Virus record (IMG/VR): IMGVR_UViG_3300049793_000366
Location: 1 to 64,000 of that record
Reading direction: 5' to 3' (one strand)
Length of the DNA: 64,000 nt
This document shows, piece by piece, positions 447-51,543 of this stretch. A model generated the notes under the pieces. That model was not told the DNA's origin. It saw only the letters and a program-made list of their open reading frames with translations, and searched no databases. Numbering within the stretch: the stretch's first letter is position 1; each line of letters opens with the position of its first letter. The translations under genes were made by a program, and so were the position numbers.

Positions 447-971
447 TTAACAGATTAACGAGTTTATACGCATATCTCTATATTCAGACATATCCAATAG
501 CTTAACAAAGTCTTCTGGGAATGCTGATATTATTTGAGCGCGAGTTAGTTCACCTGAGTATTTACCTGGTGTTTCATTCGCAGTAACATATTCACCATTG
601 TCTAATTTATATTCAAATCGATGACTTAATGCGTTGTAATAATACGGACTGTGTTCTACTTTAGAACGTATTGCGGGTAATTTATTAATCTCAGTGAGTA
701 TTTTGACCAAATTTTGACCAAGTTCCTTATGATTATGTGGATTTGGGTTTGATGAGCCATAACCATATGACATACCAGAAGTCATACTGGACATAGTAGG
801 ATTATGTATATTTTGTTGATTCGCCAAAGTCTCATAATATTCACAGTAACAAGCAAGTAGCTCTACTACTGTATTATTCTCTACACCTAATTGTGAACTT
901 AAAACTGGCTTCCACCTTTTAACGTGTTTAGCACAATCCTTTAAAATTAAATCCAATTGATTTTTTGTCAT
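447..971 (-). CDS. hypothetical protein with C-terminal RDMRINSL motif
   Basis: 174-aa ORF; carries the shared C-terminal motif. Confidence 0.7.
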   Translation of the reverse strand: MTKNQLDLILKDCAKHVKRWKPVLSSQLGVENNTVVELLACYCEYYETLANQQNIHNPTMSSMTSGMSYGYGSSNPNPHNHKELGQNLVKILTEINKLPAIRSKVEHSPYYYNALSHRFEYKLDNGEYVTANETPGKYSGELTRAQIISAFPEDFVKLLDMSEYRDMRINSLIC

Positions 972-1015
972 ATCAACATTTTTTTGTATTTTTATACAAA
1001 ATTTAATAAAAGTTT

Positions 1016-1675
1016 ATGAAACAGTACCCATCCATACCTTATTGGTCATCCGATTTACTCGGTGAGTCTTGTATTGCATTTGATAAGCTGGATGGATCTA
1101 ACATTCGCTGTGAATGGAGCAGAAAGCGTGGTTGGTATAAATTTGGCACCAGAACACAAATGATTGATGAACGAAATGAAAACTTCGGTGATGCTATACC
1201 ATTATTTCTTGATAAGTATGGTGATGATTTGGGTAGAGTTTTTCATGACAGACAATATAAATCAAAACCTAATTATGTCGCTTTCTTCGAATACTTAGGA
1301 CCTAATTCATTTGCTGGCCAGCATTCAATAACTGATAAAAAAGATGTTGTTCTTCTCGACATATCAGAATATAAACGTGGTTTAATACCACCAAAAGAAT
1401 TTGTTCAAAACTTCGGACATCTACATATTCCGAATATAATCTATCAGGGATATCTAAATCAACAATTTATCGATGATATTAAAAATGGGCAATACCCAGT
1501 AGATGAAGGTGTTATGTGCAAAGGTACTCGAAAAACCAAGGGTAGTGAGCTTATTTGGATTGCTAAAGTCAAAACAAAATCTTGGGTAGATAAAGTAAAA
1601 GCCAAGTATGGCGCAGAATGGACAAGGAAAGAACTTAATGGTGATAAAAATCTCATAGATTATTTTAATATATAA
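1016..1675 (+). CDS. ATP-dependent RNA ligase family protein
   Basis: Ligase motifs: I KLDGSN, III FFEYLG, IIIa LLDI, IV EGVMCK, V AKVK. Confidence 0.75.
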   Translation: MKQYPSIPYWSSDLLGESCIAFDKLDGSNIRCEWSRKRGWYKFGTRTQMIDERNENFGDAIPLFLDKYGDDLGRVFHDRQYKSKPNYVAFFEYLGPNSFAGQHSITDKKDVVLLDISEYKRGLIPPKEFVQNFGHLHIPNIIYQGYLNQQFIDDIKNGQYPVDEGVMCKGTRKTKGSELIWIAKVKTKSWVDKVKAKYGAEWTRKELNGDKNLIDYFNI

Positions 1676-1678
1676 TTT

Positions 1679-2035
1679 GTGATTCTGTTTAAGTGGTTAA
1701 ATGAGCAATATATACAACTTAGCTCTTATTTGCGTACTATACAAAAAGCCAAAACCAGTAGAATAGAAGTTGAAAGTGATGTCAAAGGTATCATTGATTT
1801 CTTTCACTACAATGGTGTATATAGCATAAGAGACTACCATGAGTTGAATGATTTAGAAAAATCATTCATAAAATCGATGCTTCGTACCAGAAGCAGACAG
1901 CATCAAATCGAAGTCGAGTTTCATTTAGAATTAGAACTTGCCAATAAGCAACAGTTGAAGCGTATGTTAAAAATGTACGAAGAAGAAGAGAATTATGAAA
2001 AGTGTTCTGTGATTAAGAAGAAGATTGATTCGTAA
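1679..2035 (+). CDS. hypothetical protein with C-terminal UVR (UvrB/C)-like motif
   Basis: Ends EEENYEKCSVIKKKI; start codon uncertain. Confidence 0.5.
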   Translation: MILFKWLNEQYIQLSSYLRTIQKAKTSRIEVESDVKGIIDFFHYNGVYSIRDYHELNDLEKSFIKSMLRTRSRQHQIEVEFHLELELANKQQLKRMLKMYEEEENYEKCSVIKKKIDS

Positions 2036-2480
2036 CATACTTTATGTTATAGAATATTTGAATTGGACATTTGTATTTCTTAAAATCTTTAAATTGAAGC
2101 ATATCAAAGTCAACACAATGATAGGGACCGAAATCATCTTCTCCTTTTAAATCTTGTTCATCGCAAAATTTGAAATCATATTTTAATGTAAACCTTACAA
2201 ACTCCTTTAATAAATAATCTCTTATAAAGAGTTTAGCCTCTTCGTAACTGGAATTATTATACATCGCTGTAATAGTTTCAATATCTGAATCATTCGGAAC
2301 AATTTCAGCACTTATTGTAAATACGTTACTTGGTTCATCAACTACATCGTAGTATACCTCTAATTCATTAACTTCATACGAACACTCTTCGAAATATAGA
2401 GATACCCATTCTTTAACTTTCTGTGTTGATAGAAATTCAGAATTCTCCGTAAGAAGCTTAAATGACTTTAAATATTTCAT
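2013..2480 (-). CDS. hypothetical protein, N-terminal MKYLKSF family
   Basis: MKYLKSFKLLTE; TAATATATA directly upstream. Confidence 0.7.
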   Translation of the reverse strand: MKYLKSFKLLTENSEFLSTQKVKEWVSLYFEECSYEVNELEVYYDVVDEPSNVFTISAEIVPNDSDIETITAMYNNSSYEEAKLFIRDYLLKEFVRFTLKYDFKFCDEQDLKGEDDFGPYHCVDFDMLQFKDFKKYKCPIQIFYNIKYVTNQSSS

Positions 2481-2484
2481 AAAT

Positions 2485-2528
2485 TATATATTAAAAATAA
2501 CCATACAAGATTTGGATTATAATATATA
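2485..2528. promoter_or_regulatory. back-to-back TAATATATA motifs (putative late promoters)
   Basis: Minus 2485-2493, plus 2520-2528. Confidence 0.6.
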
Positions 2529-2532: not shown

Positions 2533-3252
2533 ATGATTGAATTGAATAAGGTTTACCACGACGATTGTATAAATATTCTAAAGCAAATCAGCGATAAGTC
2601 AGTAGACTTAATACTTACAGACCCTCCGTATATAATTTCACGCAAGAGCAATTTCATTCACGCAACTGAGAATATAGATCCAGTAGTGGTTGGTAAGTTC
2701 TACAAACATTCAATCGATTTTGGTGATTGGGATAAAGAACAACTTAACATTGATGAATTGTTTGCCGAATTCAGTAGAATATTAAGACCCGGTGGAACAG
2801 TGATATGGTTCTATGATGCTTGGAAGATTGGTGAGATAAAGGATATAGCGGAAGGCTTAGACTTTAAGCAACCAAGAATATGTCAATGGGTTAAGAATAA
2901 TCCAGTACCAGTAAACTCTAAACACAATTACCTATCAAATGCTATTGAGTTCTTTGTAACATTTGTAAAGAGAGGTAAGCCAACATTTAATTCGCAATAT
3001 GATAATGGAATTTATAATTACCCAATCTATCACGCGAAAGATAGATTTCACCCAACTCAAAAGCCAATAGAATTATTTAAGGAATTGATTATAAAGCATA
3101 GTGATGAAAATATGATTGTACTTGATCCATTTGCGGGTTCTTCCACGACAGCCATTGCGGCTATGGAAACAAACAGACGATGGATTATGATTGAAAAAAA
3201 TATTGAATATTATGAGAAATCCATCGAAAGACTTAAGCTCGTATATCAGTAG
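2533..3252 (+). CDS. DNA N6-adenine/N4-cytosine methyltransferase (beta class)
   Basis: LTDPPY, HPTQKP, LDPFAGS in beta-class order; ATG 2533 preferred to TTG 2512. Confidence 0.9.
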   Translation: MIELNKVYHDDCINILKQISDKSVDLILTDPPYIISRKSNFIHATENIDPVVVGKFYKHSIDFGDWDKEQLNIDELFAEFSRILRPGGTVIWFYDAWKIGEIKDIAEGLDFKQPRICQWVKNNPVPVNSKHNYLSNAIEFFVTFVKRGKPTFNSQYDNGIYNYPIYHAKDRFHPTQKPIELFKELIIKHSDENMIVLDPFAGSSTTAIAAMETNRRWIMIEKNIEYYEKSIERLKLVYQ

Positions 3253-3412
3253 TATCGTAGATACAATAACAAAGGATGACCCTGTAAGAAAAAGGTGGTT
3301 TCCGGAATATCTCAAGATGAAGTATGTGGATAGATTATCTGCTGAAACATTAGAGGGATTCTGTTTCAGAATGGAGAGAGACAGAAAAATAGATTACATT
3401 ATTAATATATAA
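3212..3412 (+). CDS. small hypothetical protein with C-terminal RDRKIDYII motif
   Basis: Overlaps the methyltransferase end; shared C-terminal motif. Confidence 0.55.
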   Translation: MRNPSKDLSSYISSIVDTITKDDPVRKRWFPEYLKMKYVDRLSAETLEGFCFRMERDRKIDYIINI

Positions 3413-3415
3413 ATT

Positions 3416-4072
3416 ATGAAACATATTAGAACATTTGAAGAGTTAAACTTCGATACATACTACAATGCTGGTAAGAAGCTAAAAGACGAAGCTAAAGTAC
3501 CGGGCGGTAAAAGCTGGGAAAGAGATAAAACAAACACGCATTATAAAAGAGGTGCTGAAATACATAAATGGGCTTATACTAAAGAGTATAAAGATTTAGG
3601 TATTTTGGATGTTTATAGCAACAAAGGTGGTGGTAAAGCTGAGGCTATGATATCATCTTTACATATAGACCCTCTTAGTTTTTTTGAGAGTTTTATAGCT
3701 GAGGATGACCGTCCAGAGACAGGGTATATCACTATGTTTACTCAGGTATATAATATGAGTAGTGATGACGTTGAAGATTTATATTTTATAAACCTTCCAC
3801 TTAGATGGACTAACGATAAATTTCATGTAGATGGTGAACCAAACATAGACACAGATATGATAACATTGAAAGATAGACAATCAGCTATGAAGTTACGTAA
3901 GGCATTGAGTCTTGGGAATTGGATATCTGAGTTATCAAGCGATCCTAAGCTTGATAACTACGATGAGGATCTTGATATTAAGCACCAGTTTATGTTATAC
4001 TCTACACCAGATGAGTATGAAAAAATGATTAATGCATTCAAGAATATATCAGTAAATAAACTATATAAATAA
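3416..4072 (+). CDS. hypothetical protein, N-terminal MKHIRTFEE family
   Basis: N-terminal motif; TAATATATA at 3403. Confidence 0.7.
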   Translation: MKHIRTFEELNFDTYYNAGKKLKDEAKVPGGKSWERDKTNTHYKRGAEIHKWAYTKEYKDLGILDVYSNKGGGKAEAMISSLHIDPLSFFESFIAEDDRPETGYITMFTQVYNMSSDDVEDLYFINLPLRWTNDKFHVDGEPNIDTDMITLKDRQSAMKLRKALSLGNWISELSSDPKLDNYDEDLDIKHQFMLYSTPDEYEKMINAFKNISVNKLYK

Positions 4073-5297: not shown

Positions 5298-5774
5298 ATG
5301 AGTATGAACAGAAATAGGGAATATACTAAGGAATTAGCCCAGCGTATTAAGCTTCACTATGAGCATTCCGACTTCAGTAAAAAGTTTATAGAAACTTTAC
5401 TTGAGGATAGAAAATACTGCACTGATAGAATACTCAAAATAGCCAGCGAAGAGTTTAATCGAACACTTTCACATAAAGATGCAATCACGGTTCTACAATA
5501 TGTTCAATTAAATATACATAGACTTGCGGAAACAAGTGGTGTATATGCTGATAGTAGAACAATCGATGCTGTTATGTTTGGTGAACAAGAAGAAGAGATA
5601 AATTACACAAAATTAAACTTCGTACCATCTGCTAAAATCCTATATGATGAAGGATTTTATACAGAAAGCATGAAGCGTTATGGTAATAGTGGGTATATCG
5701 GTTATAACTTAGATTACATCGGTGTTAAAGTAGACCTAAGTGAAGATATTTTAGATTCAGCTCTTACTTATTAA
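5298..5774 (+). CDS. hypothetical protein
   Basis: 158-aa ORF with upstream promoter. Confidence 0.65.
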   Translation: MSMNRNREYTKELAQRIKLHYEHSDFSKKFIETLLEDRKYCTDRILKIASEEFNRTLSHKDAITVLQYVQLNIHRLAETSGVYADSRTIDAVMFGEQEEEINYTKLNFVPSAKILYDEGFYTESMKRYGNSGYIGYNLDYIGVKVDLSEDILDSALTY

Positions 5775-6792
5775 ACCTGTTATAGGCTTGTGTAGTAATC
5801 TGAACGAAGTTTGCATTGCCTTTGAACTCTTCAATCGTTCTGAATCCACAATAGCTCATGTTAGATTTTAAATAATCAGTGAAGTTTTCAACCCAAGAGT
5901 TAAGTGAGTATTCTACTCTATTATATTTAGTGATTCCCTCAGCAGTTTTCAAATCGTCTTTCTTCCAAGTCTTTTGAACTTCTTTAGTTGACATTCCTCT
6001 GTAATACTTATAAATATCTTCACCTAAAGAAAAGCGATTTAAAGCGTCTTCTGAGCCAATTTTGATATATTGCTCACCTACTTTAGTATAACTGTCTGAA
6101 ACGCTCTCTAAACACTTATTAAGTATACCACCAATCATAACTGCATCGGCACCTAAGCCAATTGCTTTTATTATATCAGAGAAGTTTCTAAATCCACCAT
6201 CAGCTATAATCTTAGTAGGATTAGTAAACTCTTTACTGATTACACCACATTCGAATATCAGTGATGCCATAGGGTAGTGAATTGCTACATTAGCTGACGT
6301 TGTGCAAGCAGAACCACCACCAATACCACAGCGCACCCAATCAACACCAATTTTACAAAATTCTCTGTATGTTTCTGGGTTAGCGATATTACCAACCATT
6401 AACTCAACATCGTATTCTTTTTTAATTCGAGAAGCTATATCAAATAACTTCTTCATATGCCCATTCGCGATATCAATAAGAACTTTTTTGGGTAATAATT
6501 TACCCGCTTCTACAATTTCGATTATCTCGTCTAAACCATATGCGTAAAATAAATGTGTATTGCTACCTGTGAAGTTGATACCTCTCGGTAGACAAATATT
6601 TATACCCTTTTCATAAAATTGATTAGCATTATCAGAGCCAATAACAGTGTCCATTGGTGCTGTGAAGAGTGGTAACATATTGATACCATTCTCTACTTTA
6701 AGTGTTGGGCTTACTTCTTTGCGACTATCTATATCACTAATTGTTGCCGGAACAATAGTAATATCGTTCCAATCGAATTTAACTTGACTCAT
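5764..6792 (-). CDS. IMP dehydrogenase/GMP reductase family enzyme (probably GMP reductase)
   Basis: TAPMDTV, DIANGH, GIGGGSACTT catalytic loop, IIADGG, YRGMST..AEG; no CBS domain and no flap RY dyad. Confidence 0.85.
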   Translation of the reverse strand: MSQVKFDWNDITIVPATISDIDSRKEVSPTLKVENGINMLPLFTAPMDTVIGSDNANQFYEKGINICLPRGINFTGSNTHLFYAYGLDEIIEIVEAGKLLPKKVLIDIANGHMKKLFDIASRIKKEYDVELMVGNIANPETYREFCKIGVDWVRCGIGGGSACTTSANVAIHYPMASLIFECGVISKEFTNPTKIIADGGFRNFSDIIKAIGLGADAVMIGGILNKCLESVSDSYTKVGEQYIKIGSEDALNRFSLGEDIYKYYRGMSTKEVQKTWKKDDLKTAEGITKYNRVEYSLNSWVENFTDYLKSNMSYCGFRTIEEFKGNANFVQITTQAYNRFNK

Positions 6793-7116: not shown

Positions 7117-7425
7117 TTAATTAAATAGCCTGTTTATTTGCGTATCTCTGGCTGATTCTGTATCTAAAACATTAAATACGTGAGCATCAAGTTCATAGAA
7201 CATACCAGATTCATAGATTCTGAGCGTACCACGGTCATTTAACACAGATATAGAACTACCATTCAGTTTAATTATTTTGTATATCTTCCCAGGTGTTAAT
7301 GCCGCATTGGCATACGCTCCCCATCTTGGGTTATCAAACCTATAATAAGCATATCGGGATTCACTTGTAACCCTGGCTTGTTTTTTAATTTTAGCTTTAT
7401 CTACTTTTAATCCGTTAAACCACAT
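7117..7425 (-). CDS. hypothetical protein with C-terminal RDTQINRL motif
   Basis: LTPGKIYKI core plus shared C-terminal motif. Confidence 0.65.
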   Translation of the reverse strand: MWFNGLKVDKAKIKKQARVTSESRYAYYRFDNPRWGAYANAALTPGKIYKIIKLNGSSISVLNDRGTLRIYESGMFYELDAHVFNVLDTESARDTQINRLFN

Positions 7426-7427: not shown

Positions 7428-8918
7428 TTAATATAGCTGTTCAAATGTTTTTATTTCATTACTTGATACTCTTCGCACTACTTGTTTTTTATTTATGCTG
7501 TGTACCGTTTTTAATCCCATCGCGCCTGCTAAATGCATAACTGAATGAACTGTATTCTTGTGAAAGTTTTTAACTCTCTCTGACTTTCTAACTGGGTCAA
7601 GTGAGTTCCATTTATTTTTATTTTGTGTTGCTACACCAACTGGACATTCATCTGTATTACAAAGTCGTGCTTGAATACAACCCAATGATAACATAAACCC
7701 ACGAGCAGAGTTAACAAGAGACGCACCCATCGATAGGGCTTTCAATACATCAAAGGCATCAATCATTTTACCAGATGCTATGATTTTAATCTCATTTTTC
7801 TTACCATACATAATCATCAGTTTATCAACAATACTAAGCGCATCAATCAATGGTGTTCCAACATTATTTGTAAACTCTAAAGGCGCGGCTCCTGTGCCAC
7901 CCTCTGAACCATCTATTGTTATAAAGTCAGGACAAATATTTAATTTATTCATTGCGATAAATATATCCTCTAATTCAGATGCATTACCAACACATAGTTT
8001 AAATCCAACTGGTTTACCACCTGATAATTGTCTTAACTTCTCAATGAATAAAATTAAACCTTCGGAGTTGTTGAATGATGTATGATAAGGTGGTGAATCA
8101 ATTTGTATGAATGGTTCAACACCTCTGATGTTAGCAATCTCTGGTGTGTTCTTTTTTGCTGGTAAAACACCACCGTGTCCGGGTTTCGCACCTTGTGATA
8201 GCTTAAGTTCAATCATCTTCACCTCTGGTCTTGTTGCGTTCTTAGTAAACATATCGATGTCAAAGTATCTAACACCATTTATTGTTTTACCTGCGCCAAA
8301 ATAACCAGTACCTATTTGAAAGCATAAATCACCACCTTGTAAATGATATTCTGATATCCCACCTTCACCAGTATTATGGTAGAATCCACCCAATTTAGAA
8401 CCTTGATTTAATGATTTGATAGCTGTTGGTGATAAAGCACCATATGACATTGCTGAGATATTTAATATTGATGCGCTGTATGGTTGTTTACAGCGAGAGC
8501 CACCAATTAAAACTCGCGGTTCATCGGCTATCTTAGTAGGATATATTGAATGATTGACCCACTCAGTACCAACTTTCTTTAAATCATGTTGTGTACCGAA
8601 TGGTGTAGAATCTATCTCATTTTTAGAACGCTGATATACGACAGACCTCTGTTCTCTTGTGAACGGAGTTCCGTCGATATCTGTCTCAATAAAATATTGA
8701 AGTAATTTAGGTCTTAGTATTTCTGCGAACCATCTGCCTCGACCAATAATTGGATAATTTCTCCAAAGTGTGTGCTTTGTTTGTTTTACATCAAACAGTG
8801 CAATCACGGCTAACAAGAGAAATATAACGCCCAGTGATAGTAATGATACAGAGCTACTTGTGTAGCCAAAAAATGTAGTAGCGAGTGCTAATGCTAATAG
8901 TGTGTATGTAATTTTCAT
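7428..8918 (-). CDS. FMN-binding glutamate synthase family protein (YerD-like) with N-terminal membrane segment
   Basis: ISAMSYGALS, HNTGEGG, ELKLSQGAKPGHGG, DGSEGGTGAAP, Fe-S motif CIQARLCNTDECPVGVATQ. Confidence 0.92.
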   Translation of the reverse strand: MKITYTLLALALATTFFGYTSSSVSLLSLGVIFLLLAVIALFDVKQTKHTLWRNYPIIGRGRWFAEILRPKLLQYFIETDIDGTPFTREQRSVVYQRSKNEIDSTPFGTQHDLKKVGTEWVNHSIYPTKIADEPRVLIGGSRCKQPYSASILNISAMSYGALSPTAIKSLNQGSKLGGFYHNTGEGGISEYHLQGGDLCFQIGTGYFGAGKTINGVRYFDIDMFTKNATRPEVKMIELKLSQGAKPGHGGVLPAKKNTPEIANIRGVEPFIQIDSPPYHTSFNNSEGLILFIEKLRQLSGGKPVGFKLCVGNASELEDIFIAMNKLNICPDFITIDGSEGGTGAAPLEFTNNVGTPLIDALSIVDKLMIMYGKKNEIKIIASGKMIDAFDVLKALSMGASLVNSARGFMLSLGCIQARLCNTDECPVGVATQNKNKWNSLDPVRKSERVKNFHKNTVHSVMHLAGAMGLKTVHSINKKQVVRRVSSNEIKTFEQLY

Positions 8919-8971: not shown

Positions 8972-9100
8972 TTAGTGATTAACTAAAAGATATGAACCGA
9001 TTATGAAAGCACCTAATAATACAAGCCATCCAATTGGAATTGTTTCGCCTTTACTGTGGTCAACCACAAATAATTTACCGGCAAGTTTTAATTTTCTCAT
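8972..9100 (-). CDS. small membrane protein (42 aa, not in ORF track)
   Basis: MRKLKLAGKLFVVDHSKGETIPIGWLVLLGAFIIGSYLLVNH; fills a gap in the minus-strand run. Confidence 0.45.
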   Translation of the reverse strand: MRKLKLAGKLFVVDHSKGETIPIGWLVLLGAFIIGSYLLVNH

Positions 9101-9230
9101 CGAGGTTTAAATTTAATTGTTCATTATTACTTACAGCAAGAATTTCCTTTTCTTGTTTATCCTGTTTGAGATTTTCAACATATACCTTTAACTCACGCTC
9201 CCAAAAATCTCTTCTTTCTATATCATTCAT
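9075..9230 (-). CDS. small hypothetical protein (51 aa, not in ORF track)
   Basis: MNDIERRDFWERELKVYVENLKQ...; begins 5 nt after the stop of the preceding minus-strand gene. Confidence 0.5.
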   Translation of the reverse strand: MNDIERRDFWERELKVYVENLKQDKQEKEILAVSNNEQLNLNLDEKIKTCR

Positions 9231-9235
9231 ATACT

Positions 9236-9538: not shown

Positions 9539-9580
9539 AGTAGTATGTTTATTAGTTCATACTTTCTATAATCTAAACAA

Positions 9581-9904
9581 TTAAAAGTTGTTAGAAATCT
9601 TCCTATCCCTCATTTCTGATATTGCTTCATTCAATAATTCCTGTAATGTATCAGCAGATGTACTCCAATGTGAGTTACTATCAACCTCTATAAAAAAATC
9701 ATCAATGAACGAATCAAGTTTAAAATATTTACCATAGTTCTCAACAAGCCAAATCAATTTCTCTTTAGACTTTATATAATCCTTTGATACGCTACTTAAA
9801 TGAACATCATTTTTAACGGTACAACATTGTCCAAATATATGAGTACGCAATTCATCTTTGATGTATTTAGCCGCTTCTGGTGTGTGTTCGAGAGTTTCTA
9901 ACAT
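9581..9904 (-). CDS. hypothetical protein with C-terminal RDRKISN motif
   Basis: ATG 9904 overlaps the upstream gene end; shared C-terminal motif. Confidence 0.6.
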   Translation of the reverse strand: MLETLEHTPEAAKYIKDELRTHIFGQCCTVKNDVHLSSVSKDYIKSKEKLIWLVENYGKYFKLDSFIDDFFIEVDSNSHWSTSADTLQELLNEAISEMRDRKISNNF

Positions 9905-10410
9905 TCTAAATATTTTAAAATTGATTCCCAATCTGGAAATCTACCAGTACCGAAATGTATATGTTCTCCTTTAAACTCAGTAACACCATATTTTGTCCTA
10001 TCATCAATCAATGCTTTTCCGGCGAATAAGCTTTTGTCATTTGATAATATCAATCTTTTATAAGCAACATCACCAAGGTATTTCTCAACCCATAATCGCT
10101 TATCAATGTAGCATGATGGATTTTCCCAAGATGGTGCTGATAGAATATAGACTTCGTATTTAGCAGCTAATCGATGAAATGCTTCTACTGCTCCTTTTAT
10201 TGGCGGAACATCTGCGTAGAAGCCAGGTGTGTGATAAAATTTTTTATCGAATAATGTTTTCGTATCAATTCCTAATTTAGTTGACCATTCAGACATCCTA
10301 ACCTCAAGGTCAACTATTACTCCGTCCATATCGACAAATAATAATTCTTTTGGATTTTCTAAGTAACCATAAACTGGATCTCTTTCGGAGTTTCCGTGTT
10401 GTTCTTTCAT
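9898..10410 (-). CDS. 5'(3')-deoxyribonucleotidase (NT5C, HAD family)
   Basis: FVDMDGVIVD, ILSAP, DKRLWVEKYLG, LIDD. Confidence 0.88.
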   Translation of the reverse strand: MKEQHGNSERDPVYGYLENPKELLFVDMDGVIVDLEVRMSEWSTKLGIDTKTLFDKKFYHTPGFYADVPPIKGAVEAFHRLAAKYEVYILSAPSWENPSCYIDKRLWVEKYLGDVAYKRLILSNDKSLFAGKALIDDRTKYGVTEFKGEHIHFGTGRFPDWESILKYLEC

Positions 10411-10709
10411 ACTAATGTACTAATTTTTTTGTGCCGAGCTATTTGCTTCTCGGTTAAGTTCGAATCACAGAAATGAATGTCCGCCTCTTTAGCTGTGAAG
10501 TAATATAATTTAATCGGTAGTCTATGATTCCACCAATCATAAAATCTCTTATCATATCTTTCAACTTCTATTGAAAAGCCAAACCCAGTTTTGCGAGTAC
10601 CGTGTAACAACGTTAAGTCACCACAACCTTTTATTCGATAAGTTTTACCTTCTTCGATAAAGCCGCGGGATTTAATGCAATATAGTTCTGTGCCTATTTC
10701 TAATTCCAT
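10407..10709 (-). CDS. hypothetical protein with C-terminal RHKKISTL motif
   Basis: GTELYCIK..EGKTY core plus shared C-terminal motif. Confidence 0.65.
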   Translation of the reverse strand: MELEIGTELYCIKSRGFIEEGKTYRIKGCGDLTLLHGTRKTGFGFSIEVERYDKRFYDWWNHRLPIKLYYFTAKEADIHFCDSNLTEKQIARHKKISTLV

Positions 10710-10983: not shown

Positions 10984-11625
10984 TTAGCTCCTACGATTAA
11001 ATCTTTTCAACGTTTTTTTGAACAATGTTGATTTTTTGTAAATCTCATCATTCAAGTGTAGCGGAGAAGTAGAAAGGTATGCTTGTGATTCATCAATATG
11101 AACTTTGTCCGGATATCCAGCATCAGATAGATATTCTTTCAATAATGCTTTACTCTGATGTGTGAAAGAGTCCCATATTTTATTAACCTCTTCCTTATAT
11201 TCAGTATTTATGTAATATAATCCATGTGCTACTTCATGTTCGAGTGTTTTATCATCATCTTCCTTTATACCAATCAAATAAAAGTCACCATCACCGTGAA
11301 TCATACGAGCTTCATCATATATGTCAAACATTCTCGTATCGTGTTGATTTAAATCAAGAATTCCAATTCTCTTTACTTCTTCAATAACGGTTGATGGTAT
11401 ATTGAAACCAGTCCAGTCTTCGTGATATGAAAATGCACCATTGTCGCAAACTTCTTTAACGTACCAATCCATGTATTGAACTATCGTGAACTGTTTACCT
11501 CTTATTTGGTCACTATTAGATTCGTAGAATTCTTGATATCGTAAGAACGTCATTGCTAAATCATATGACTCTTCAAATTGAACCAGATAGATACCATCTA
11601 AATATTTGCTGAGTTTATACATCAC
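10984..11625 (-). CDS. putative zincin-like metallopeptidase
   Basis: HEVAH (HExxH) followed by DESQAY. Confidence 0.5.
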   Translation of the reverse strand: MMYKLSKYLDGIYLVQFEESYDLAMTFLRYQEFYESNSDQIRGKQFTIVQYMDWYVKEVCDNGAFSYHEDWTGFNIPSTVIEEVKRIGILDLNQHDTRMFDIYDEARMIHGDGDFYLIGIKEDDDKTLEHEVAHGLYYINTEYKEEVNKIWDSFTHQSKALLKEYLSDAGYPDKVHIDESQAYLSTSPLHLNDEIYKKSTLFKKTLKRFNRRS

Positions 11626-11999
11626 TCTCCAAGAGCTTCTATTTTAATATCTCTTCTTATTTGTTTCAGTATTGTTTTCATTTCGGTTGAGATGTAATCA
11701 GAAGCATAAAATAATTGATATACATCATCATGGTTTGTCTCTGATATACTCATAGACATATTTCTATGTTCAGAGTTAATAGTCATTGTTATCTCAAACG
11801 CATAACCAAGTGTTGCCTTAGCTGGTAGAAACTGTGTATCAATCTTTTCAACTGAAATTGGCGACTCATCAAATATTTGCTCAGATGTATCATACAATAA
11901 TATTCGAGCCTCTGTTGAGGCAAGTATACCAGTCTCTTTCTCAATGAGAACAGCATAATAAGTAGCATTTTTATAAACCAACTTATTGTTTATTAACAT
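11622..11999 (-). CDS. hypothetical protein with C-terminal RDIKIEAL motif
   Basis: Shared C-terminal motif. Confidence 0.65.
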   Translation of the reverse strand: MLINNKLVYKNATYYAVLIEKETGILASTEARILLYDTSEQIFDESPISVEKIDTQFLPAKATLGYAFEITMTINSEHRNMSMSISETNHDDVYQLFYASDYISTEMKTILKQIRRDIKIEALGE

Positions 12000-13552: not shown

Positions 13553-13888
13553 TTAGAAATAAATTGAAAAAGTTGAGAGTGTTTTTACTTTCAATTCATC
13601 TGGTAAGAAATCTCCAACTCTCTGAACCTTATCTTCGCCGATTAATTCATCAAGTTTTTGTTCTCTAACCCTTTCTGGTGAGTTCATATACCAATCATAC
13701 CAATAATCACTACTGTATGGTTGACACATTGCACAATTGCAATAATCATAGTCTCTTTCATCTTGTTCTATACACCAATAGCATCCGTCAGCGCAGATAG
13801 AACCACAATAAGCACAACCGTGTCTTAGTTCCTTATCGATTCTTTCTTCTTCTTTTTCTACTTTTGTTTTATTTTTACTAAGTGACAT
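13553..13888 (-). CDS. Cys-rich hypothetical protein with REQKLDEL motif
   Basis: CAYC..C..CYWC..CNCAMC suggests metal binding. Confidence 0.55.
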   Translation of the reverse strand: MSLSKNKTKVEKEEERIDKELRHGCAYCGSICADGCYWCIEQDERDYDYCNCAMCQPYSSDYWYDWYMNSPERVREQKLDELIGEDKVQRVGDFLPDELKVKTLSTFSIYF

Positions 13889-13930
13889 AATTGTATATAT
13901 CATTGGATAAAACTAGTTGATATCCAAAAT

Positions 13931-18457: not shown

Positions 18458-18961
18458 TTATTTTAAAATGTTATCAATCCTGAGTTCTCTCATTTCATCT
18501 TTGGTTAATACCTTATTGAGTACATCACTGAGTATATATGGATTGAAGAATTCAATTATCGTATTGGTGCTATCGCCTTCTCTATCAAATAAGAATATAT
18601 TAACAATGCCATTTTTGGCTAATTCGATCCTAATTCGCGCCTTTTCTCGCTCAAGTGAATAAAACTTATTCAATGCTAAGTCATTATTATAAGGTGAAGC
18701 TTCAAAGCCGAGTTCATATAGTTTATTAATAATAAAACCTCTTCTCTCTTCTTGTGATTCACTCTTAGTATAAGTATCGTAGTAAATATTAAGACTTGGG
18801 TAATGTCTAATCGTATCTACTCCAATTACCAACCAATCAATTATGTCATTAGTCTCGCTCATATTAAGCGTAGCAAAAGAGTTTGAGTTAACTACACACT
18901 GATGTATGTTAGTTTTCTCATATTTACTTTCAGCTTCTAATATTGCGTAACCTAATTGCAT
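18458..18961 (-). CDS. hypothetical protein with C-terminal RELRIDNIL motif
   Basis: Shared C-terminal motif. Confidence 0.65.
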   Translation of the reverse strand: MQLGYAILEAESKYEKTNIHQCVVNSNSFATLNMSETNDIIDWLVIGVDTIRHYPSLNIYYDTYTKSESQEERRGFIINKLYELGFEASPYNNDLALNKFYSLEREKARIRIELAKNGIVNIFLFDREGDSTNTIIEFFNPYILSDVLNKVLTKDEMRELRIDNILK

Positions 18962-28126: not shown

Positions 28127-28399
28127 ATGAAAATGAGCAAACAAAGACTAGCAACAATATGTCTAATGTTGGGGATGTTTTTCAACCCCTTTGGCTTCGA
28201 TGCAGTACAGGTGATGTTAATAAATTCAACTGGCAGTTATTGGAAAGCCAATTTAGTATTGTATTGCCTTGCGGGATTCTGTTTTGGGCTGTACTTCTTA
28301 TTTTCGGGTAATAATCCATTCACATCAATCAAGAATATTCTTTCAGATTTGTGGTTAAAGAGAAAAAGAAAATCTAAACTAAATAGTCTATTTAAGTGA
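28127..28399 (+). CDS. small two-TM membrane protein (holin-like candidate)
   Basis: Two hydrophobic helices, basic C-terminal tail, TAATATATA at 28028. Confidence 0.5.
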   Translation: MKMSKQRLATICLMLGMFFNPFGFDAVQVMLINSTGSYWKANLVLYCLAGFCFGLYFLFSGNNPFTSIKNILSDLWLKRKRKSKLNSLFK

Positions 28400-43560: not shown

Positions 43561-43950
43561 ATGAGATTCTTAAAGAAATTTAAAGAGGTATTTAAAAAAC
43601 CAGAAGATAAGAAGGAGACAAATGAAATTTTGCTCAAAAAGCTAGAATCCGAGGTAGATGTTTACTTTCAAGGATTGATTGACGAGAGTGAATTATGGGA
43701 AAAGGAAGTTGAATATAGTTTCATAACTGGTATACAAACATTACAAATTGCTTTCAGATTCAATGAAGAAGATAAAGCTGTTATGAGAAATAATATGGTT
43801 TCTCTAAAAAAGGAAGCAAAAAGATGTTGTTCAGTACTTATGAGTGACCATCCATATATAAAATTTGAAATATATGCTGGGCCAGATATATCAATAGCTT
43901 TTGATGAGCTACAAATACACATAACAATAGAGAATGAAAGGACTAATTAA
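43561..43950 (+). CDS. hypothetical protein, N-terminal MRFLKKFKE
   Basis: N-terminal motif; TAATATATA at 43547. Confidence 0.7.
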   Translation: MRFLKKFKEVFKKPEDKKETNEILLKKLESEVDVYFQGLIDESELWEKEVEYSFITGIQTLQIAFRFNEEDKAVMRNNMVSLKKEAKRCCSVLMSDHPYIKFEIYAGPDISIAFDELQIHITIENERTN

Positions 43951-49772: not shown

Positions 49773-50884
49773 TCTTCCTTTTTGAATTTATAATTTGTAT
49801 TGTAAATATCAATGATGTGTTCATATTCACCCAATACACCTAATTTGGTTTTATCCGCATCATATGTTTGTTGCTGAATGTAATCTTTAATCATTGATTC
49901 AAATTCAAAGTTTGTTTCAGTTGTGAATTCTGTTTCACGTAATCCCTTTTCGACATCGGTTTCAACTTGCTTTGCTTCATTGATATCATCGATGTATTCT
50001 ACTGATGAAAATCCACCAGTTTCAAGAATTTTCTCAAGTTTTCGTCTAAGCTTACGGTTACCAATTAATAAAGAGTTAGAAATATATAAATCTATATAAT
50101 TATTAGTATTGATAACTCCCAAATCTTCTACATCCATCTCTGTTAATATTGATAGCTTTTCAAATCGAGGTGATAATGTATTAGGAATAAACTTCTCACT
50201 CATATCATCAAAATCCAATATGAATATACCCTTCTGGTTACTCATATCATTTCTATCCATCTCATAAGGAGAACCGACGAAGGTAAAGTTAGCACTTCTT
50301 TGTACTAAGTGAATATGCCCTGAGTACACTTTCTTGAAACCACCAAATTCAACAACTTCTATTTTATCTCTATTTTTATGAGCTACTGATTTAAGATGTA
50401 ATCTTGCGCCATTCAAATCAGAGTGACAGAATAAGTAATCACAACCACTATACTTACGCAATAGTGCTATTTGCTCATTCTTATGTTCAACCCAAGGCAT
50501 CATTAGAACATCCCTGTTATCGAATCTTACTTTAGTAGTAGTTTCATATAGTGTTATGTTTGGAATGAATTTAATAGACTTTGGTGAGTTTATATCATTG
50601 GTTGATTTATTTGAAATGTCGTGGTTACCAATCAACATATGAACTGGTAAGATTTGACCAATCTCTTCGAATAAGTCGATAACGGTGGATATTACTTCTA
50701 CCGGAATCTGATTTCTATTATCGAATAAGTCACCACAGTGTATTACGATATCACCCGGTAATGATTCTTTTTTTAAAAGAGGAATAAAAAATTCCTTAAA
50801 GTATTTTACCATCATTTTAAGCCATTTATCCGAGTTTATGGGATAAACACCAAAGTGGGTATCAGAAATTACAAATGCTCTCAT
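49769..50884 (-). CDS. recombination endonuclease (T4 gp47/SbcD/Mre11 family)
   Basis: ISDTHFG, GDLFDNR, GNHD, MMPW, SGHIH, VGSPY. Confidence 0.9.
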   Translation of the reverse strand: MRAFVISDTHFGVYPINSDKWLKMMVKYFKEFFIPLLKKESLPGDIVIHCGDLFDNRNQIPVEVISTVIDLFEEIGQILPVHMLIGNHDISNKSTNDINSPKSIKFIPNITLYETTTKVRFDNRDVLMMPWVEHKNEQIALLRKYSGCDYLFCHSDLNGARLHLKSVAHKNRDKIEVVEFGGFKKVYSGHIHLVQRSANFTFVGSPYEMDRNDMSNQKGIFILDFDDMSEKFIPNTLSPRFEKLSILTEMDVEDLGVINTNNYIDLYISNSLLIGNRKLRRKLEKILETGGFSSVEYIDDINEAKQVETDVEKGLRETEFTTETNFEFESMIKDYIQQQTYDADKTKLGVLGEYEHIIDIYNTNYKFKKED

Positions 50885-50946
50885 TTAATTAAAAAGTTCT
50901 TTTGTTATTGTATTGATAATCCACGCATTTGTTTAATATATAACAC

Positions 50947-51171
50947 ATGAAGAAGCACAGATATACCGGAGAATTTGTCATACTCAAAAGAGACCTGAGA
51001 AAGGTCACAATTGACAAAATAAGCGTAGATGGAGATAGCTACTTCATATCATATTTTACAGAATATAATAAGGTCACTTATGAAATAATAACTGAATCGG
51101 ACATATTAACAGAAGAAGAATATGATAAAATAAAGGATAGGACGAATAAAATTAATAGATTATTCGAATAA
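50947..51171 (+). CDS. hypothetical protein with C-terminal RTNKINRL motif
   Basis: Shared C-terminal motif; TAATATATA at 50934. Confidence 0.65.
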   Translation: MKKHRYTGEFVILKRDLRKVTIDKISVDGDSYFISYFTEYNKVTYEIITESDILTEEEYDKIKDRTNKINRLFE

Positions 51172-51172
51172 T

Positions 51173-51204
51173 TTTGGTCACATATAAACTTTTGTTTATA
51201 TTTG
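51173..51204 (+). promoter_or_regulatory. Bacteroidota primary-sigma promoter
   Basis: TTTG-N20-TATATTTG. Confidence 0.7.
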
Positions 51205-51210
51205 TGTATT

Positions 51211-51543
51211 ATGTCAATGAAAATAGCACTATCTGGTAAATTCTCATGTTATGAGTTAATCTGTGACGATGATGGATTGATTAGGTGTCATAACTTAAAG
51301 GATGATACTACTCAAACATTATGTACATTTGATCCTACATATTTGAGTATTAGATTTAAGTCTGAGCGTTACAAAAACTTAAGAAAGTGGATGGACCGTA
51401 AAGTAAGAATACTTTATGAGTTAAATAAATCACGCCGCTCTTCTTACTCAATGACATCTGGTGAGAAAACCAGGATAATCAATGAGTTCTATTCTACTCT
51501 TAAAACAGAGGTTAGAGAGTTCAAATTGAAAGACTTAGAATAA
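51211..51543 (+). CDS. hypothetical protein with C-terminal REFKLKDL motif
   Basis: Shared C-terminal motif. Confidence 0.6.
   Translation: MSMKIALSGKFSCYELICDDDGLIRCHNLKDDTTQTLCTFDPTYLSIRFKSERYKNLRKWMDRKVRILYELNKSRRSSYSMTSGEKTRIINEFYSTLKTEVREFKLKDLE

What the first reader, a model, noticed from the sequence alone, without database searches (positions are those of the whole stretch)
447..51543. Shared C-terminal R[DE]x[KR]Ixx[LI] motif on 10 unrelated small proteins
Seen at or near the C-terminus: RDMRINSL (447), RDRKIDYI (3212), RDTQINRL (7117), RDRKISNN (9581), RHKKISTL (10407), RDIKIEAL (11622), REQKLDEL (13553, followed by a short tail), RELRIDNI (18458), RTNKINRL (50947), REFKLKDL (51211). 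The protein bodies show no evident mutual similarity, and none carries the N-terminal capsid-type peptide. Inference: a second portable address label, a short amphipathic helix docking accessory proteins on a common partner (protease adaptor, scaffold or replication compartment) or acting as a degron. I do not recognise a described function for it.
Basis: partly seen in the sequence, partly recalled or inferred. Interest (0 to 1): 0.78.

Follow-up and report, generated by a model that had tools for sequence, protein, structure and literature searches.

The report
C-terminal address tag on megaphage proteins
About one in seven proteins of this soil megaphage and its relatives, otherwise unrelated to each other, end in the same short helix-forming peptide; it looks like a sorting or docking tag for proteins that do not go into the virus particle, and no such tag appears to have been described.

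Summary
All ten sites exist. An eleventh carrier lies at 28127-28399.

A scoring matrix trained only on a related 642-kb phage (LR756502.1) ranks these sites as the top ten of 19,298 window positions. Shuffled proteins give 0.6 hits against 13 observed.

In LR756502.1, 147 of 995 ORFs (15%) carry the tail. In 53 further IMG/VR contigs, 257 of 1,051 do.

- The signal acts on the protein, not the DNA: Arg codon usage matches the genome, and 141 of 151 DNA-matrix hits are in frame.
- The bodies are unrelated: 121 of 154 are singletons, and carriers include a riboflavin kinase.
- The tail survives body divergence in 37 of 41 homolog pairs.
- It is confined to one clade; equally AT-rich sister phages have none.

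It almost never shares a protein with the N-terminal T4-CTS-like label (MK[HY][LI]K.[YF]). It also almost never follows the late-type promoter TAATATATA that precedes structural and N-label genes.

Best reading: a capped three-turn helix that docks non-virion accessory proteins on one shared receptor. The receptor and the outcome (localisation or degradation) are unknown.

The parts
447..971 (-). Carrier gene, 174 aa. The tail helix plus end is encoded at 450-491, with the core RDMRINSL at 456-479. Arg is at -10.
   Evidence: matrix score 13.5 bits. The homolog in LR756502.1 (23% identity) keeps the tail as FRDKKIDKVLL.
3212..3412 (+). Carrier gene, 66 aa counted from the ATG at 3212. The tail is encoded at 3365-3409, with the core RDRKIDYI at 3377-3400. 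Arg is at -11. The extra end residues I-N-I are encoded by TTAATATATAA, the late-type promoter-like motif of the next gene (3416).
   Evidence: (13.0 bits).
7117..7425 (-). Carrier gene, 102 aa. The tail is encoded at 7120-7161, with the core RDTQINRL at 7126-7149. Arg is at -10. It belongs to the only sizeable carrier family (15 members).
   Evidence: (10.7 bits). Homologs P0002-P0004 (42-60% identity) all keep the tail.
9581..9931 (-). Carrier gene, 116 aa. The tail is encoded at 9584-9622, with the core RDRKISNN at 9587-9610. Arg is at -9.
   Evidence: 13.0 bits. The LR756502.1 homolog at 26% identity keeps the tail as RQIRLNEIGV.
10407..10709 (-). Carrier gene, 100 aa. The tail is encoded at 10410-10448, with the core RHKKISTL at 10413-10436. 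Arg is at -9. Its stop codon overlaps the start of the next gene (GTATGA).
   Evidence: 13.3 bits.
11622..11999 (-). Carrier gene, 125 aa, directly downstream of the SpoVR-like gene. The tail is encoded at 11625-11666, with the core RDIKIEAL at 11631-11654. Arg is at -10. It is the best-scoring site in the window.
   Evidence: 19.1 bits. Residues 100-125 of the Atlas model align with helical segments.
13553..13903 (-). 116-aa Cys-rich protein with the motif inside the protein. The core REQKLDEL is at 13643-13666 and Arg is at -37. A further 29 residues follow the motif.
   Evidence: 18.5 bits. It is the only strong site in the window that is not at the end.
18458..18961 (-). Carrier gene, 167 aa. 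The tail is encoded at 18461-18502, with the core RELRIDNI at 18467-18490. Arg is at -10.
   Evidence: 16.6 bits. The profile search links its body to LR756502.1 carrier 154507-155172, whose tail is RDIKIESIL.
28127..28399 (+). The tail is encoded at 28355-28396, with the core RKSKLNSL at 28367-28390. Arg is at -10. Position +1 is Lys rather than D/N/E. The gene converges on, and overlaps by 12 nt, the N-label gene 28388-28702.
   Evidence: 14.4 bits. Whether this ORF is a real gene was not tested.
50947..51171 (+). Carrier gene, 74 aa. The tail is encoded at 51127-51168, with the core RTNKINRL at 51139-51162. Arg is at -10. It is the one window carrier that has the late-type promoter-like motif, 13 nt upstream.
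   Evidence: (11.6 bits).
51211..51543 (+). Carrier gene, 110 aa counted from the ATG at 51211 (the ORF opens at a TTG at 51202). The tail is encoded at 51502-51540, with the core REFKLKDL at 51514-51537. Arg is at -9.
   Evidence: 13.9 bits.

Best explanation
The last roughly 14 residues form a clade-specific short linear motif that acts on the protein, not the nucleic acid.

**Consensus.** [K/hydrophobic]-[S/Q/D]-x-hydrophobic-R-[D/N/E]-x-K-[L/I]-[N/D/K]-[K/E]-[I/L]-[L/G]-x, followed by 0-6 further residues.

**Form.** It most likely folds as a capped three-turn helix. The conserved residues are the hydrophobic residue at -1, R0, K+3, L/I+4, I/L+7 and L/G+8. At 100 degrees per residue they fall on one face, with the invariant Arg in the middle of the apolar stripe.

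**Proposed function.** The helix plugs into one shared receptor protein, either phage-encoded or from the presumably Bacteroidota host. This gives more than 100 unrelated, fast-evolving accessory proteins a common destination or handler.

**Relation to the other label.** It is the counterpart of the N-terminal T4-CTS-like label in the same genomes. N-label genes carry the late, structural-type promoter and are probably head cargo. C-tail genes lack that promoter, so their products are probably made earlier and act inside the infected cell.

**Shown.** Existence, fixed position, protein-level selection, portability, retention, clade restriction, exclusivity with the N-label, and a different promoter class.

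**Inferred.** The helix, binding in trans, a single receptor, and the consequence. I favour localisation or recruitment over degradation, at roughly 2:1.
For: **Position and excess**
- Window.
- LR756502.1: 107 of 176 loose-pattern hits have Arg at -8 to -13 (5.2 expected), with the mode at -10.
- 147 of 995 ORFs are carriers by matrix, including 25-30% of ORFs of 60-150 aa.
- In 53 further IMG/VR contigs, 257 of 1,051 distinct ORFs are carriers. Of these, 198 are independent of the search pattern.

**Protein level, not DNA**
- Synonymous codons vary.
- Arg codons are AGA 78, AGG 21 and CGN 8, against 75.6, 16.5 and 15 expected from the genome.
- 141 of 151 DNA-matrix hits are in frame 0 on the coding strand.

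**Unrelated bodies**
- 108 of 118 are singletons by BLAST.
- 121 of 154 are singletons after iterative profile search, like the control set.
- Carriers include a riboflavin kinase, a BtpA-like protein and a DUF6011 protein.
- The body domain of 7117 also occurs as repeats in long proteins (their C-termini were not read).

**Retention**
- 37 of 41 homolog pairs found by body alone keep the tail, and 26 of 27 below 45% body identity do.
- P0002-P0004 keep it.

**Logo consistent with a capped helix**
- No Pro or Gly from -4 to +7, S/D at -3, and Gly at +8 followed by Ile.
- The tail lies inside helix 155-173 of a model with pLDDT 84.

**Clade restriction with a composition control**
- Loci with a SpoVR-like protein at least 66% identical to the window's have 1-6 carriers each.
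- 18 loci at 65% identity or less have none among 482 ORFs, including loci of 27-29% GC.

**Exclusivity with the N-label**
- Overlap is 0 of 75 against 147 (P=3.7e-6).
- Overlap is 1 in the independent set.

**Promoter class**
- [AT]AATATATA lies 8-45 nt upstream of 35 of 75 N-label genes, 148 of 773 other genes and 1 of 147 C-tail genes.
- In independent contigs the figures are 40.5%, 14.4% and 2.7% (P=1.6e-10).
- In the window the motif precedes the endolysin, the tail-fibre block and the 1,907-aa protein. It is conserved at their LR756502.1 orthologs.
Against: - No receptor was found, and no complex prediction could be run.
- In the one confident model the tail helix has pLDDT 82-83. It may therefore pack on its own protein.
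- The last 14 residues are on average no more identical between homologs than the bodies are (0.39 against 0.39). Selection therefore acts on about six positions only.
- Arg invariance is partly by construction, because the training set required Arg.
- The expression class is inferred from a promoter-like motif only. No RNA data exist.
- The TATATTT[AG] motif, enriched before C-tail genes in LR756502.1, was not replicated. 'Early' is therefore not shown; only 'not late-type' is.
- One window carrier (50947) does have the late-type motif.
- ORFs come from a greedy longest-ORF caller, not a gene finder.
Confidence: 0.5

Rival explanations
1. The tail is a degron. It is recognised, directly or through an adaptor, by an AAA+ protease of the host or the phage. 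The non-virion accessory proteins would then be cleared together, for example at the switch to late development. Virion cargo (N-label) and large core enzymes would be spared.
For: - The tail is near the extreme C-end, followed by 1-8 variable residues.
- It is absent from N-label proteins.
- It is nearly absent from ORFs over 300 aa: 3 of 156.
- Its genes lack the late-type promoter.
- It is portable across unrelated bodies.
- This reading shares the docking step with the best explanation and differs only in the outcome.
Against: - Known bacterial C-terminal degrons are read mainly from the last 3-5 residues and the carboxylate (ssrA LAA, MuA RRKKAI; from memory).
- Here the conserved residues sit 3-10 residues from an end of variable length and sequence.
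- No protease or adaptor was identified.
- Tagging 15-25% of all ORFs for destruction has no precedent that I know of.
Confidence: 0.2
2. The tail is a capsid-interior or scaffold docking helix. C-tail proteins would bind the inside of the procapsid shell or its core and be packaged as a second class of head cargo. This would resemble encapsulin cargo peptides or the C-terminal helix of scaffolding proteins.
For: - There are precedents for C-terminal peptides that bind HK97-fold shells: encapsulin cargo-loading peptides, and the P22 and 80alpha/SaPI1 scaffolding C-termini (from memory).
- Carriers are small and numerous, like the internal proteins of giant phages (PMC5694885).
- One window carrier (50947) has the late-type motif.
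Against: - C-tail genes almost never follow the late-type promoter that precedes structural and N-label genes: 1 of 147, and 7 of 257.
- The genome already has a CTS-like label on at least 75 ORFs, and the two labels exclude each other.
- Carriers include metabolic enzymes.
- In the window they lie among tRNA-synthetase and metabolic genes, not structural ones.
Confidence: 0.1
3. There is no external receptor. The tail would be a generic self-contained helix that stabilises or caps small, newly evolved proteins. Alternatively, the tails would bind each other and oligomerise the carriers.
For: - The tail helix is modelled with pLDDT 82-83 in one family.
- The motif has built-in capping residues.
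- Carriers are mostly small orphan proteins with no detectable homologs.
Against: - One conserved face bearing an invariant Arg cannot pack in the same way on more than 100 unrelated folds.
- Sister clades with similar small orphan proteins and the same base composition lack it entirely.
- Strict exclusion from N-label proteins is not expected of a stability element.
- Eleven helical residues are too few for a stable coiled coil.
Confidence: 0.08
4. The peptide is a by-product of a nucleic-acid signal at gene 3' ends. That signal would be a promoter, a translation-initiation region or a coupling element for the next gene.
For: - 84% of carriers are followed by a same-strand gene. For 68% of those the gap is 5 nt or less (48% for other small genes).
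- A-ending codons are in mild excess in the tail: AAA 74 against 56, TTA 46 against 27, ATA 56 against 34. This fits the A-rich leaders without a Shine-Dalgarno sequence seen in this clade.
- The ending G-I-stop is often GGA ATA TGA, which overlaps the next ATG.
- In 3212-3412 the last three codons are the next gene's promoter-like motif.
Against: - The DNA matrix hits frame 0 of the coding strand in 141 of 151 cases. Only 10 hits are out of frame, antisense or intergenic.
- Register shifts are in whole codons.
- Arg codon usage equals the genome's.
- 16% of carriers have no same-strand downstream gene.
- Equally AT-rich relatives have no motif.
- Nucleic-acid constraints shape only the last few codons and the codon choice.
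Confidence: 0.03
5. All carriers are diverged members of one protein family, and only the last helix is still recognisable.
For: - One real paralog family of 15 exists among the carriers, including 7117.
- Carrier genes cluster in arrays, which suggests duplication.
Against: - 121 of 154 bodies stay singletons after three rounds of profile search, no more connected than length-matched non-carriers.
- Lengths range from about 44 to 622 aa.
- Some bodies are known, unrelated domains: riboflavin kinase, BtpA and DUF6011.
Confidence: 0.04

Closest known systems
T4 capsid-targeting sequence (CTS) of internal proteins and Alt (Mullaney and Black 1996, as summarised in PMC5694885)
   Same: A short terminal peptide, portable between unrelated proteins, that gives phage proteins a common destination. 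The same genomes carry a CTS-like N-terminal label, and the C-tail appears to be its counterpart.
   Different: - The CTS is N-terminal and is removed by the prohead protease. It belongs to late head proteins.
- The tail here is C-terminal and has a different sequence.
- The tail is excluded from N-label proteins, and its genes lack the late-type promoter.
Encapsulin cargo-loading peptides and bacterial-microcompartment encapsulation peptides (from memory)
   Same: Short terminal peptides on unrelated cargo proteins that dock on one shell protein. Encapsulin peptides are C-terminal; the microcompartment ones are amphipathic helices.
   Different: - The sequence is different: there is no Gly/Ser/Leu-rich encapsulin consensus.
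- There is no distinct linker before the tail.
- No shell gene has been linked to the carriers.
- The scale is far larger: 15-25% of ORFs rather than a few cargo enzymes.
C-terminal tethering and degradation tags of AAA+ proteases: the SspB ClpX-binding tail, ssrA, and the MuA C-terminus (from memory)
   Same: A variable body carries a short C-terminal peptide that docks on one machine. Basic and aliphatic residues matter, as in MuA RRKKAI.
   Different: - The conserved residues are not the last residues.
- The end is variable in length and sequence.
- No unfoldase has been identified.
Hub-binding C-terminal motifs: PIP box, T4 gp45 clamp-binding tails, and the ESCRT-III MIM1 helix that binds the Vps4 MIT domain (from memory)
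   Same: - Many unrelated proteins reach one hub through a short motif near the C-end.
- The hydrophobic register [LI]+4, [IL]+7, [LG]+8 matches positions 4, 7 and 8 of a PIP box.
- [KR]-L-x-x-L resembles the R-L-x-x-L of MIM1.
   Different: - There is no aromatic pair and no Gln.
- There is an invariant Arg that those motifs lack.
- No carrier larger than 300 aa had a polymerase or other replisome domain.
RxLR and PEXEL host-targeting motifs of oomycete and Plasmodium effectors (from memory)
   Same: Hundreds of small, fast-evolving, otherwise unrelated proteins, clustered in variable genome regions, share one short Arg-containing motif that sorts them.
   Different: Those motifs are N-terminal, eukaryotic and tied to secretion. 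This is an analogy of genome logic only.

Membership tests
T4-type capsid-targeting sequence | N-terminal propeptide of 10-20 residues | tested here: not met
   The motif lies 9-11 residues from the C-end.
T4-type capsid-targeting sequence | Carried by late-expressed head proteins | tested here: not met
   The late-type promoter-like motif precedes 1 of 147 and 7 of 257 C-tail genes, against 47% and 40% of N-label genes. This is a promoter inference only, with no expression data.
T4-type capsid-targeting sequence | Removed by the prohead protease at an [LI]-x-E site | not testable with these tools
   Glu at +6 after [LI]+4 occurs in only 31 of 147 tails. Cleavage cannot be tested here.
Encapsulin cargo-loading peptide | C-terminal position on unrelated cargo | tested here: met
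Encapsulin cargo-loading peptide | Gly/Ser/Leu-rich consensus (recalled from memory) and binding to an HK97-fold shell | tested here: not met
   The logo is R-[DNE]-x-K-[LI]-x-x-[IL]-[LG], which does not match. Binding was not testable.
ssrA/MuA-type C-terminal degron | Recognition determinants in the last 3-5 residues and the free carboxylate | tested here: not met
   The residues after +8 vary in number (1-8 after +7) and in identity.
SspB-type tethering tail | Short C-terminal peptide after a flexible linker that binds the N-domain of an AAA+ unfoldase | tested here: inconclusive
   A C-terminal peptide is present. There is no compositional linker upstream. No unfoldase was identified.
PIP box or sliding-clamp-binding motif | Q-x-x-[ILM]-x-x-[FY]-[FY], or for T4 an L-D-F-L-F-type aromatic plug | tested here: not met
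   Only the aliphatic register fits. Positions +7 and +8 are I/L and L/G, with Phe at +8 in 4 of 147.
PIP box or sliding-clamp-binding motif | Present on the polymerase and other replisome proteins | tested here: inconclusive
   - Only 3 of 156 ORFs over 300 aa score as carriers.
- The 622-aa one had no Pfam domain, the 301-aa one was BtpA-like, and the 360-aa one was not scanned.
- The polymerase itself was not located.
ESCRT-III MIM1 helix | (D/E)-x-x-L-x-x-R-L-x-x-L-(K/R) at the C-end, binding an MIT domain | tested here: not met
   Only the [KR]-L-x-x-L part matches. The invariant Arg sits four residues earlier. An MIT partner was not searched for.
Single paralogous protein family | Homology detectable over the body of the proteins | tested here: not met
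   - 108 of 118 bodies are singletons by BLAST.
- 121 of 154 bodies are singletons by iterative profile search.
- Known unrelated domains occur in some carriers.

The most novel reading that the evidence does not exclude
This clade of megaphages, which probably infect Bacteroidota, runs a proteome-scale sorting code with two orthogonal signal peptides. An N-terminal CTS-like label sends late proteins into the head. A C-terminal helix sends a second, larger set of earlier accessory proteins to a different dedicated receptor, such as an intracellular compartment, an export route or a dedicated unfoldase. That would be the first two-address protein-sorting system described in a bacteriophage, and the tail would be a ready-made targeting tag.
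Probability: 0.3. Interest if true: 0.9.

Novelty: new variant of a known kind. Interest (0 to 1): 0.8.

Why it matters
**It groups the unknowns.** Most genes of huge phages are orphans with no handle for study. A shared tag on 15-25% of ORFs splits that dark matter into classes: head cargo, C-tail proteins and the rest. It also predicts that one receptor handles more than 100 proteins.

**It gives a direct route to experiments.** Finding that receptor would reveal how a megaphage organises or times its accessory proteins in the infected cell.

**It has practical uses.**
- The tag is a 14-residue candidate targeting or destabilising peptide for Bacteroidota.
- It helps gene calling: it marks true stop codons.
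- It is a simple marker for this phage clade in metagenomes.

Tried and rejected
**Searches that found nothing useful**
- Pfam and PHROGs on all window carriers gave no significant family.
- The word-indexed protein search of 447-971 found only the protein itself.
- Megablast of 9000-14000 against GenBank phages found nothing.
- A profile of the window tails against PDB sequences found nothing at E up to 10.
- The ESM Atlas search with the tail of 11622 gave only generic helical matches, all below the reliable score.
- Five literature searches found no description of the motif. The Nature 2020 huge-phage paper contains no occurrence of 'C-terminal'.
- Only one DNA run, from a soil metagenome and probably the source, holds the window. 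No listed RNA run was shown to hold it (a dedicated RNA search was not made).

**Structure prediction that did not help**
- AlphaFold on 18458-18961 without an alignment gave pLDDT 45 and is unusable.
- Foldseek of the good model (family A1) against PDB gave no hit at E of 0.001 or below.

**Ideas tested and dropped**
- 'The tail is more conserved than the body': mean identity of the last 14 residues equals that of the bodies. I replaced this with the retention test.
- 'C-tail genes have their own early promoter TATATTT[AG], the Bacteroidetes -7 element': it was enriched in LR756502.1 but not in the independent contigs. It is kept only as a note.
- Shine-Dalgarno explanation of the G-I ending: rejected, because the clade does not use Shine-Dalgarno sequences.
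- Membrane-anchoring helix: considered and rejected, because the invariant Arg lies in the centre of the apolar face and carriers are not enriched in transmembrane segments.

Full report
**What the window is.** The window is 32% GC and tightly packed with genes.
- It encodes a GluRS/GlnRS-type and a second class-I tRNA synthetase, an IMPDH/GMP-reductase, a glutamate-synthase-domain protein, a SpoVR-like protein, a GH19 endolysin, tail-fibre-like proteins, a tail-sheath fragment and a 1,907-aa protein.
- Its own contig is IMGVR_UViG_3300049793_000366 (507,910 bp; L035). One of its proteins is also recorded on a 711,805-bp contig.
- The only run holding it is a soil metagenome.
- The nearest GenBank relatives are the uncultured 'huge phages' LR756502.1 (642 kb) and LR745206.1 (634 kb), at about 71% identity over the SpoVR-like protein.
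- The 634-642-kb genomes of that study belong to the Mahaphage clade, predicted to infect Bacteroidetes (PMC7162821).

**Check of the observation.**
- Nine have the Arg 9-11 residues from the C-end.
- The consensus in the title fits only four of the ten. A looser form, R-x-x-[KRQ]-[IL]-x-x-[LI], fits nine.
- The strict pattern occurs four times in 20,178 residues, and all four are at -10 or -11 (0.08 expected). The loose pattern has 9 of its 15 hits at -9 to -11 (0.3 expected).
- I then built a 12-column scoring matrix from a different genome only (LR756502.1) and scanned the window. Thirteen positions reach 10 bits against 0.6 in shuffled proteins, and ten of those are C-terminal.
- Among all 1,559 stop-to-stop frames in six frames, only 11 end with a score of 8 bits or more. 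Ten of them are these genes.

**It is a protein signal, not a DNA signal.**
- In the window the conserved residues use different synonymous codons.
- In LR756502.1 the Arg codons at the invariant position match genome usage: AGA 78, AGG 21 and CGN 8, against 75.6, 16.5 and 15 expected.
- A DNA matrix of the 24 coding bases hits frame 0 of the coding strand in 141 of 151 cases. Only 10 hits are out of frame, antisense or intergenic.
- Shifts of the motif relative to the stop codon are in whole codons.
- Nucleic-acid constraints do leave marks on the last few codons. A-ending codons are in mild excess. This fits leaders that are 50-56% A and lack Shine-Dalgarno sequences in this clade.
- Carriers are often directly followed by the next gene. 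The ending G-I-stop is often GGA ATA TGA, overlapping the next ATG.
- In 3212-3412 the final I-N-I is encoded by the promoter-like TTAATATATAA of gene 3416.

**It is not one family.**
- BLAST of the bodies without their tails leaves 108 of 118 carriers as singletons.
- Three rounds of profile search leave 121 of 154 as singletons. That is no more connected than a length-matched control. There is one real family of 15, which includes 7117.
- Some carriers in LR756502.1 have known, unrelated domains: riboflavin kinase (with an 86-residue extension ending in the tail), a BtpA-like domain, and DUF6011.
- The body domain of 7117 also occurs as repeats inside long proteins elsewhere; their C-termini were not read.

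**Scale and distribution.**
- I fetched and joined the whole of LR756502.1.
- 107 of its 176 loose-pattern hits have the Arg at -8 to -13 (5.2 expected), with a sharp mode at -10.
- By matrix, 147 of 995 ORFs (15%) are carriers, including 25-30% of ORFs of 60-150 aa. Only 3 of 156 ORFs over 300 aa are carriers.
- Carriers pile up in arrays at both ends of the record: 29 of 47 ORFs in the last 25 kb and 20 of 64 in the first.
- Around the SpoVR-like gene, 14 IMG/VR loci whose protein is at least 66% identical to the window's have 1-6 carriers each.
- Eighteen loci at 65% identity or less have none among 482 ORFs, and Ralstonia phage RsoM2USA has none either. Several of these loci are just as AT-rich, at 27-29% GC.
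- A degenerate DNA pattern for one flavour of the tail pulled 69 stretches from 53 further IMG/VR contigs, up to 483 kb long. There, 257 of 1,051 distinct ORFs carry the tail, and 198 of those do not contain the search pattern.

**Anatomy (147 tails).** Positions are numbered from the invariant Arg as 0.

| Position | Residues |
|---|---|
| -4 | K or hydrophobic |
| -3 | S, Q or D |
| -1 | hydrophobic |
| 0 | R (all; partly by construction) |
| +1 | D 74, N 28, E 28 |
| +3 | K 109, R 13 |
| +4 | L 84, I 61 |
| +5 | N, D or K |
| +6 | K or E |
| +7 | I 91, L 50 |
| +8 | L 79, G 38, I 17 |

- After +7 come 1-8 residues, most often 2.
- Pro and Gly are absent from -4 to +7, and nothing is conserved upstream of -5.
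- There are two flavours: ...L-G-I-stop, dominant in the arrays, and ...I-L-x-stop. The window has mostly the second.
- S or D at -3 and Gly at +8 followed by Ile look like helix N- and C-caps. That is my reading of the logo.
- At 100 degrees per residue the conserved residues fall on one face, with the Arg in its centre. This is my calculation from the logo, not a tool result.
- In an AlphaFold model of one carrier family (pLDDT 84) the tail lies in helix 155-173.

**Retention.**
- I searched with bodies only and then looked at the homologs' ends. 37 of 41 homologous pairs keep the tail, and 26 of 27 below 45% body identity do.
- Window examples: 447 and 9581 have LR756502.1 homologs at 23-26% identity that keep the tail.
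- 7117 has homologs at 42-60% identity in a library of 1.84 billion proteins, and they keep it too.
- Averaged over all 14 tail residues, identity is no higher than in the bodies. Selection therefore acts on about six positions.

**The second label and the promoter classes.**
M-K-[HY]-[LI]-[KR]-x-[YF]-... starts at least 75 ORFs of LR756502.1 and 9 ORFs of the window.
- It resembles the T4 capsid-targeting propeptides, 10-20 residues long and removed by the prohead protease (PMC5694885). The T4 sequence itself I know only from memory.
- No ORF has both labels in the window or in LR756502.1 (P=3.7e-6). One of 1,051 has both in the independent contigs. Both labels occur in the same clade only.
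- A promoter-like motif, [AT]AATATATA, lies 8-45 nt upstream of a same-strand start in 184 of its 286 occurrences. It precedes 47% of N-label genes, 19% of other genes and 1 of 147 C-tail genes.
- In the independent contigs the figures are 40.5%, 14.4% and 2.7% (P=1.6e-10 and 2.4e-8).
- In the window it precedes the endolysin, the tail-fibre block, the 661-aa and 1,907-aa proteins and the N-label genes. It does not precede the synthetase, SpoVR or metabolic genes. The same holds at the LR756502.1 orthologs.
- I read it as the late, structural promoter class, by analogy with the T4 late promoter TATAAATA (from memory).
- C-tail genes therefore belong to other transcription units. Only one window carrier, 50947, is an exception.

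**Mechanism.**
- *Shown:* a positionally fixed, protein-level, portable and retained tail. It is restricted to one clade, excluded from probable head cargo and from nearly all large ORFs, and found on genes outside the late-type class.
- *Inferred:* a conserved face with a central Arg cannot pack in the same way on more than 100 unrelated bodies. It most likely binds one external receptor as a short capped helix.
- I commit to a docking or address tag for non-virion accessory proteins (0.5).
- Within that, I favour localisation or recruitment over timed degradation (0.2 as a separate rival). My reason is that the conserved residues are not the terminal ones.
- Capsid-interior docking (0.1) is disfavoured by the promoter data and by the coexisting CTS-like label.
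- A self-stabilising or self-associating helix (0.08), a nucleic-acid by-product (0.03) and a single diverged family (0.04) are largely excluded by the controls above.

**Comparison with known systems.**
- The tail works like the T4 CTS, encapsulin or microcompartment targeting peptides, the SspB tail, or hub-binding motifs such as PIP and MIM1.
- It meets the defining sequence or position features of none of them (see the membership table).
- I found no description of it in the searchable literature.

**Limits.**
- ORFs come from a greedy longest-ORF caller.
- Start codons, and hence the N-label counts and promoter distances, are approximate.
- There are no expression or proteomic data.
- No complex prediction was possible.
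- The receptor is unknown.

Noticed in passing
window 2013-2480(-), 3416-4072(+), 28388-28702(-), 43561-43950(+), 54043-54471(+), 54944-55696(-), 56839-57459(+, from Met9), 59285-59797(+), 60412-61167(-, from Met9): - These ORFs carry an N-terminal label M-[KR]-[HYF]-[LI]-[KR]-x-[FY]-x-E/x-F, similar to T4 capsid-targeting propeptides. It often includes an I/L-x-E-type site (for example K-I-F-E-S in relatives).
- At least 75 ORFs in LR756502.1 carry it.
- It is never found together with the C-tail in the window or in LR756502.1.
   Followed up: partly
window, e.g. 1666(+), 2493(-), 3403(+), 18237(-), 20549(+), 28715(-), 30610(-), 37763(-), 43528(-), 43547(+), 44771(+), 50934(+), 54009(+), 56164(+), 59250(+): - The promoter-like motif [AT]AATATATA sits 13 nt or about 27-35 nt upstream of start codons.
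- It precedes the endolysin, tail-fibre, large virion-type and N-label genes.
- It is conserved at the LR756502.1 orthologs.
- It is probably the late promoter of this clade.
   Followed up: partly
LR756502.1 (L003-L016), all gene starts: - There are no Shine-Dalgarno sequences: 6% of genes have an SD-like 4-mer, against 9% of random 17-mers.
- Leaders are 50-56% A and 5-10% G from -20 to -5.
- This fits a Bacteroidota host, as predicted for these genomes in PMC7162821.
- TATATTT[AG], which resembles the Bacteroides -7 element TAnnTTTG, was enriched before C-tail genes in this genome but not in other contigs.
   Followed up: partly
window 13984-15510(-), 51775-54003(+), 5764-6792(-), 7428-8918(-), 11999-13507(-): The phage encodes a GluRS/GlnRS-type tRNA synthetase, a class-I (Ile/Leu/Val/Met-type) tRNA synthetase, an IMPDH/GMP-reductase, a glutamate-synthase-domain protein and a SpoVR-like protein. 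In relatives the SpoVR-like gene follows ORFs of about 640 aa and 420 aa (not identified here; possibly PrkA- and YeaH-like).
   Followed up: no
window 3365-3415: The end of carrier 3212-3412 and the promoter-like motif of gene 3416 share the same bases (ATT ATT AAT ATA TAA ATT ATG). The unusually long ending I-I-N-I of this tail is dictated by the neighbour's regulatory sequence.
   Followed up: yes
window 7117-7425(-); proteins P0005-P0008, P0010: The body of carrier 7117 (about residues 14-100) matches a domain that occurs three or four times in long proteins (391-1,231 aa) from other metagenomes. P0009 (87 aa) is a short homolog without the tail.
   Followed up: partly
window 35764-37749(-) and 37770-43493(-): - The 661-aa protein has six repeated stretches matching phrog_25468 and a run of eight Gly near its end.
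- Next to it lies a 1,907-aa protein with no family match.
- Both are preceded by the late-type motif.
   Followed up: no
window 23440-24147(+), 24147-24725(+), 27733-28011(+): Three neighbouring ORFs in the tail-fibre block end alike (...ARINIIGL...VEINIIGI...VDIIIIG). This suggests paralogous fibre modules with a shared C-terminal strand.
   Followed up: no
window 13553-13903(-): This Cys-rich 116-aa protein sits between the tRNA-synthetase and SpoVR-like genes. It has a full-strength motif (18.5 bits) that is followed by 29 more residues. It may be a carrier that gained an extension or lost its stop codon.
   Followed up: no
L033 (IMGVR_UViG_3300017754_002918): In this locus the SpoVR-like protein is 65% identical to the window's, almost as close as in the motif-positive loci. 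Yet none of its 39 ORFs has either label. It marks the boundary of the clade and is the best contrast genome for finding the receptor.
   Followed up: no
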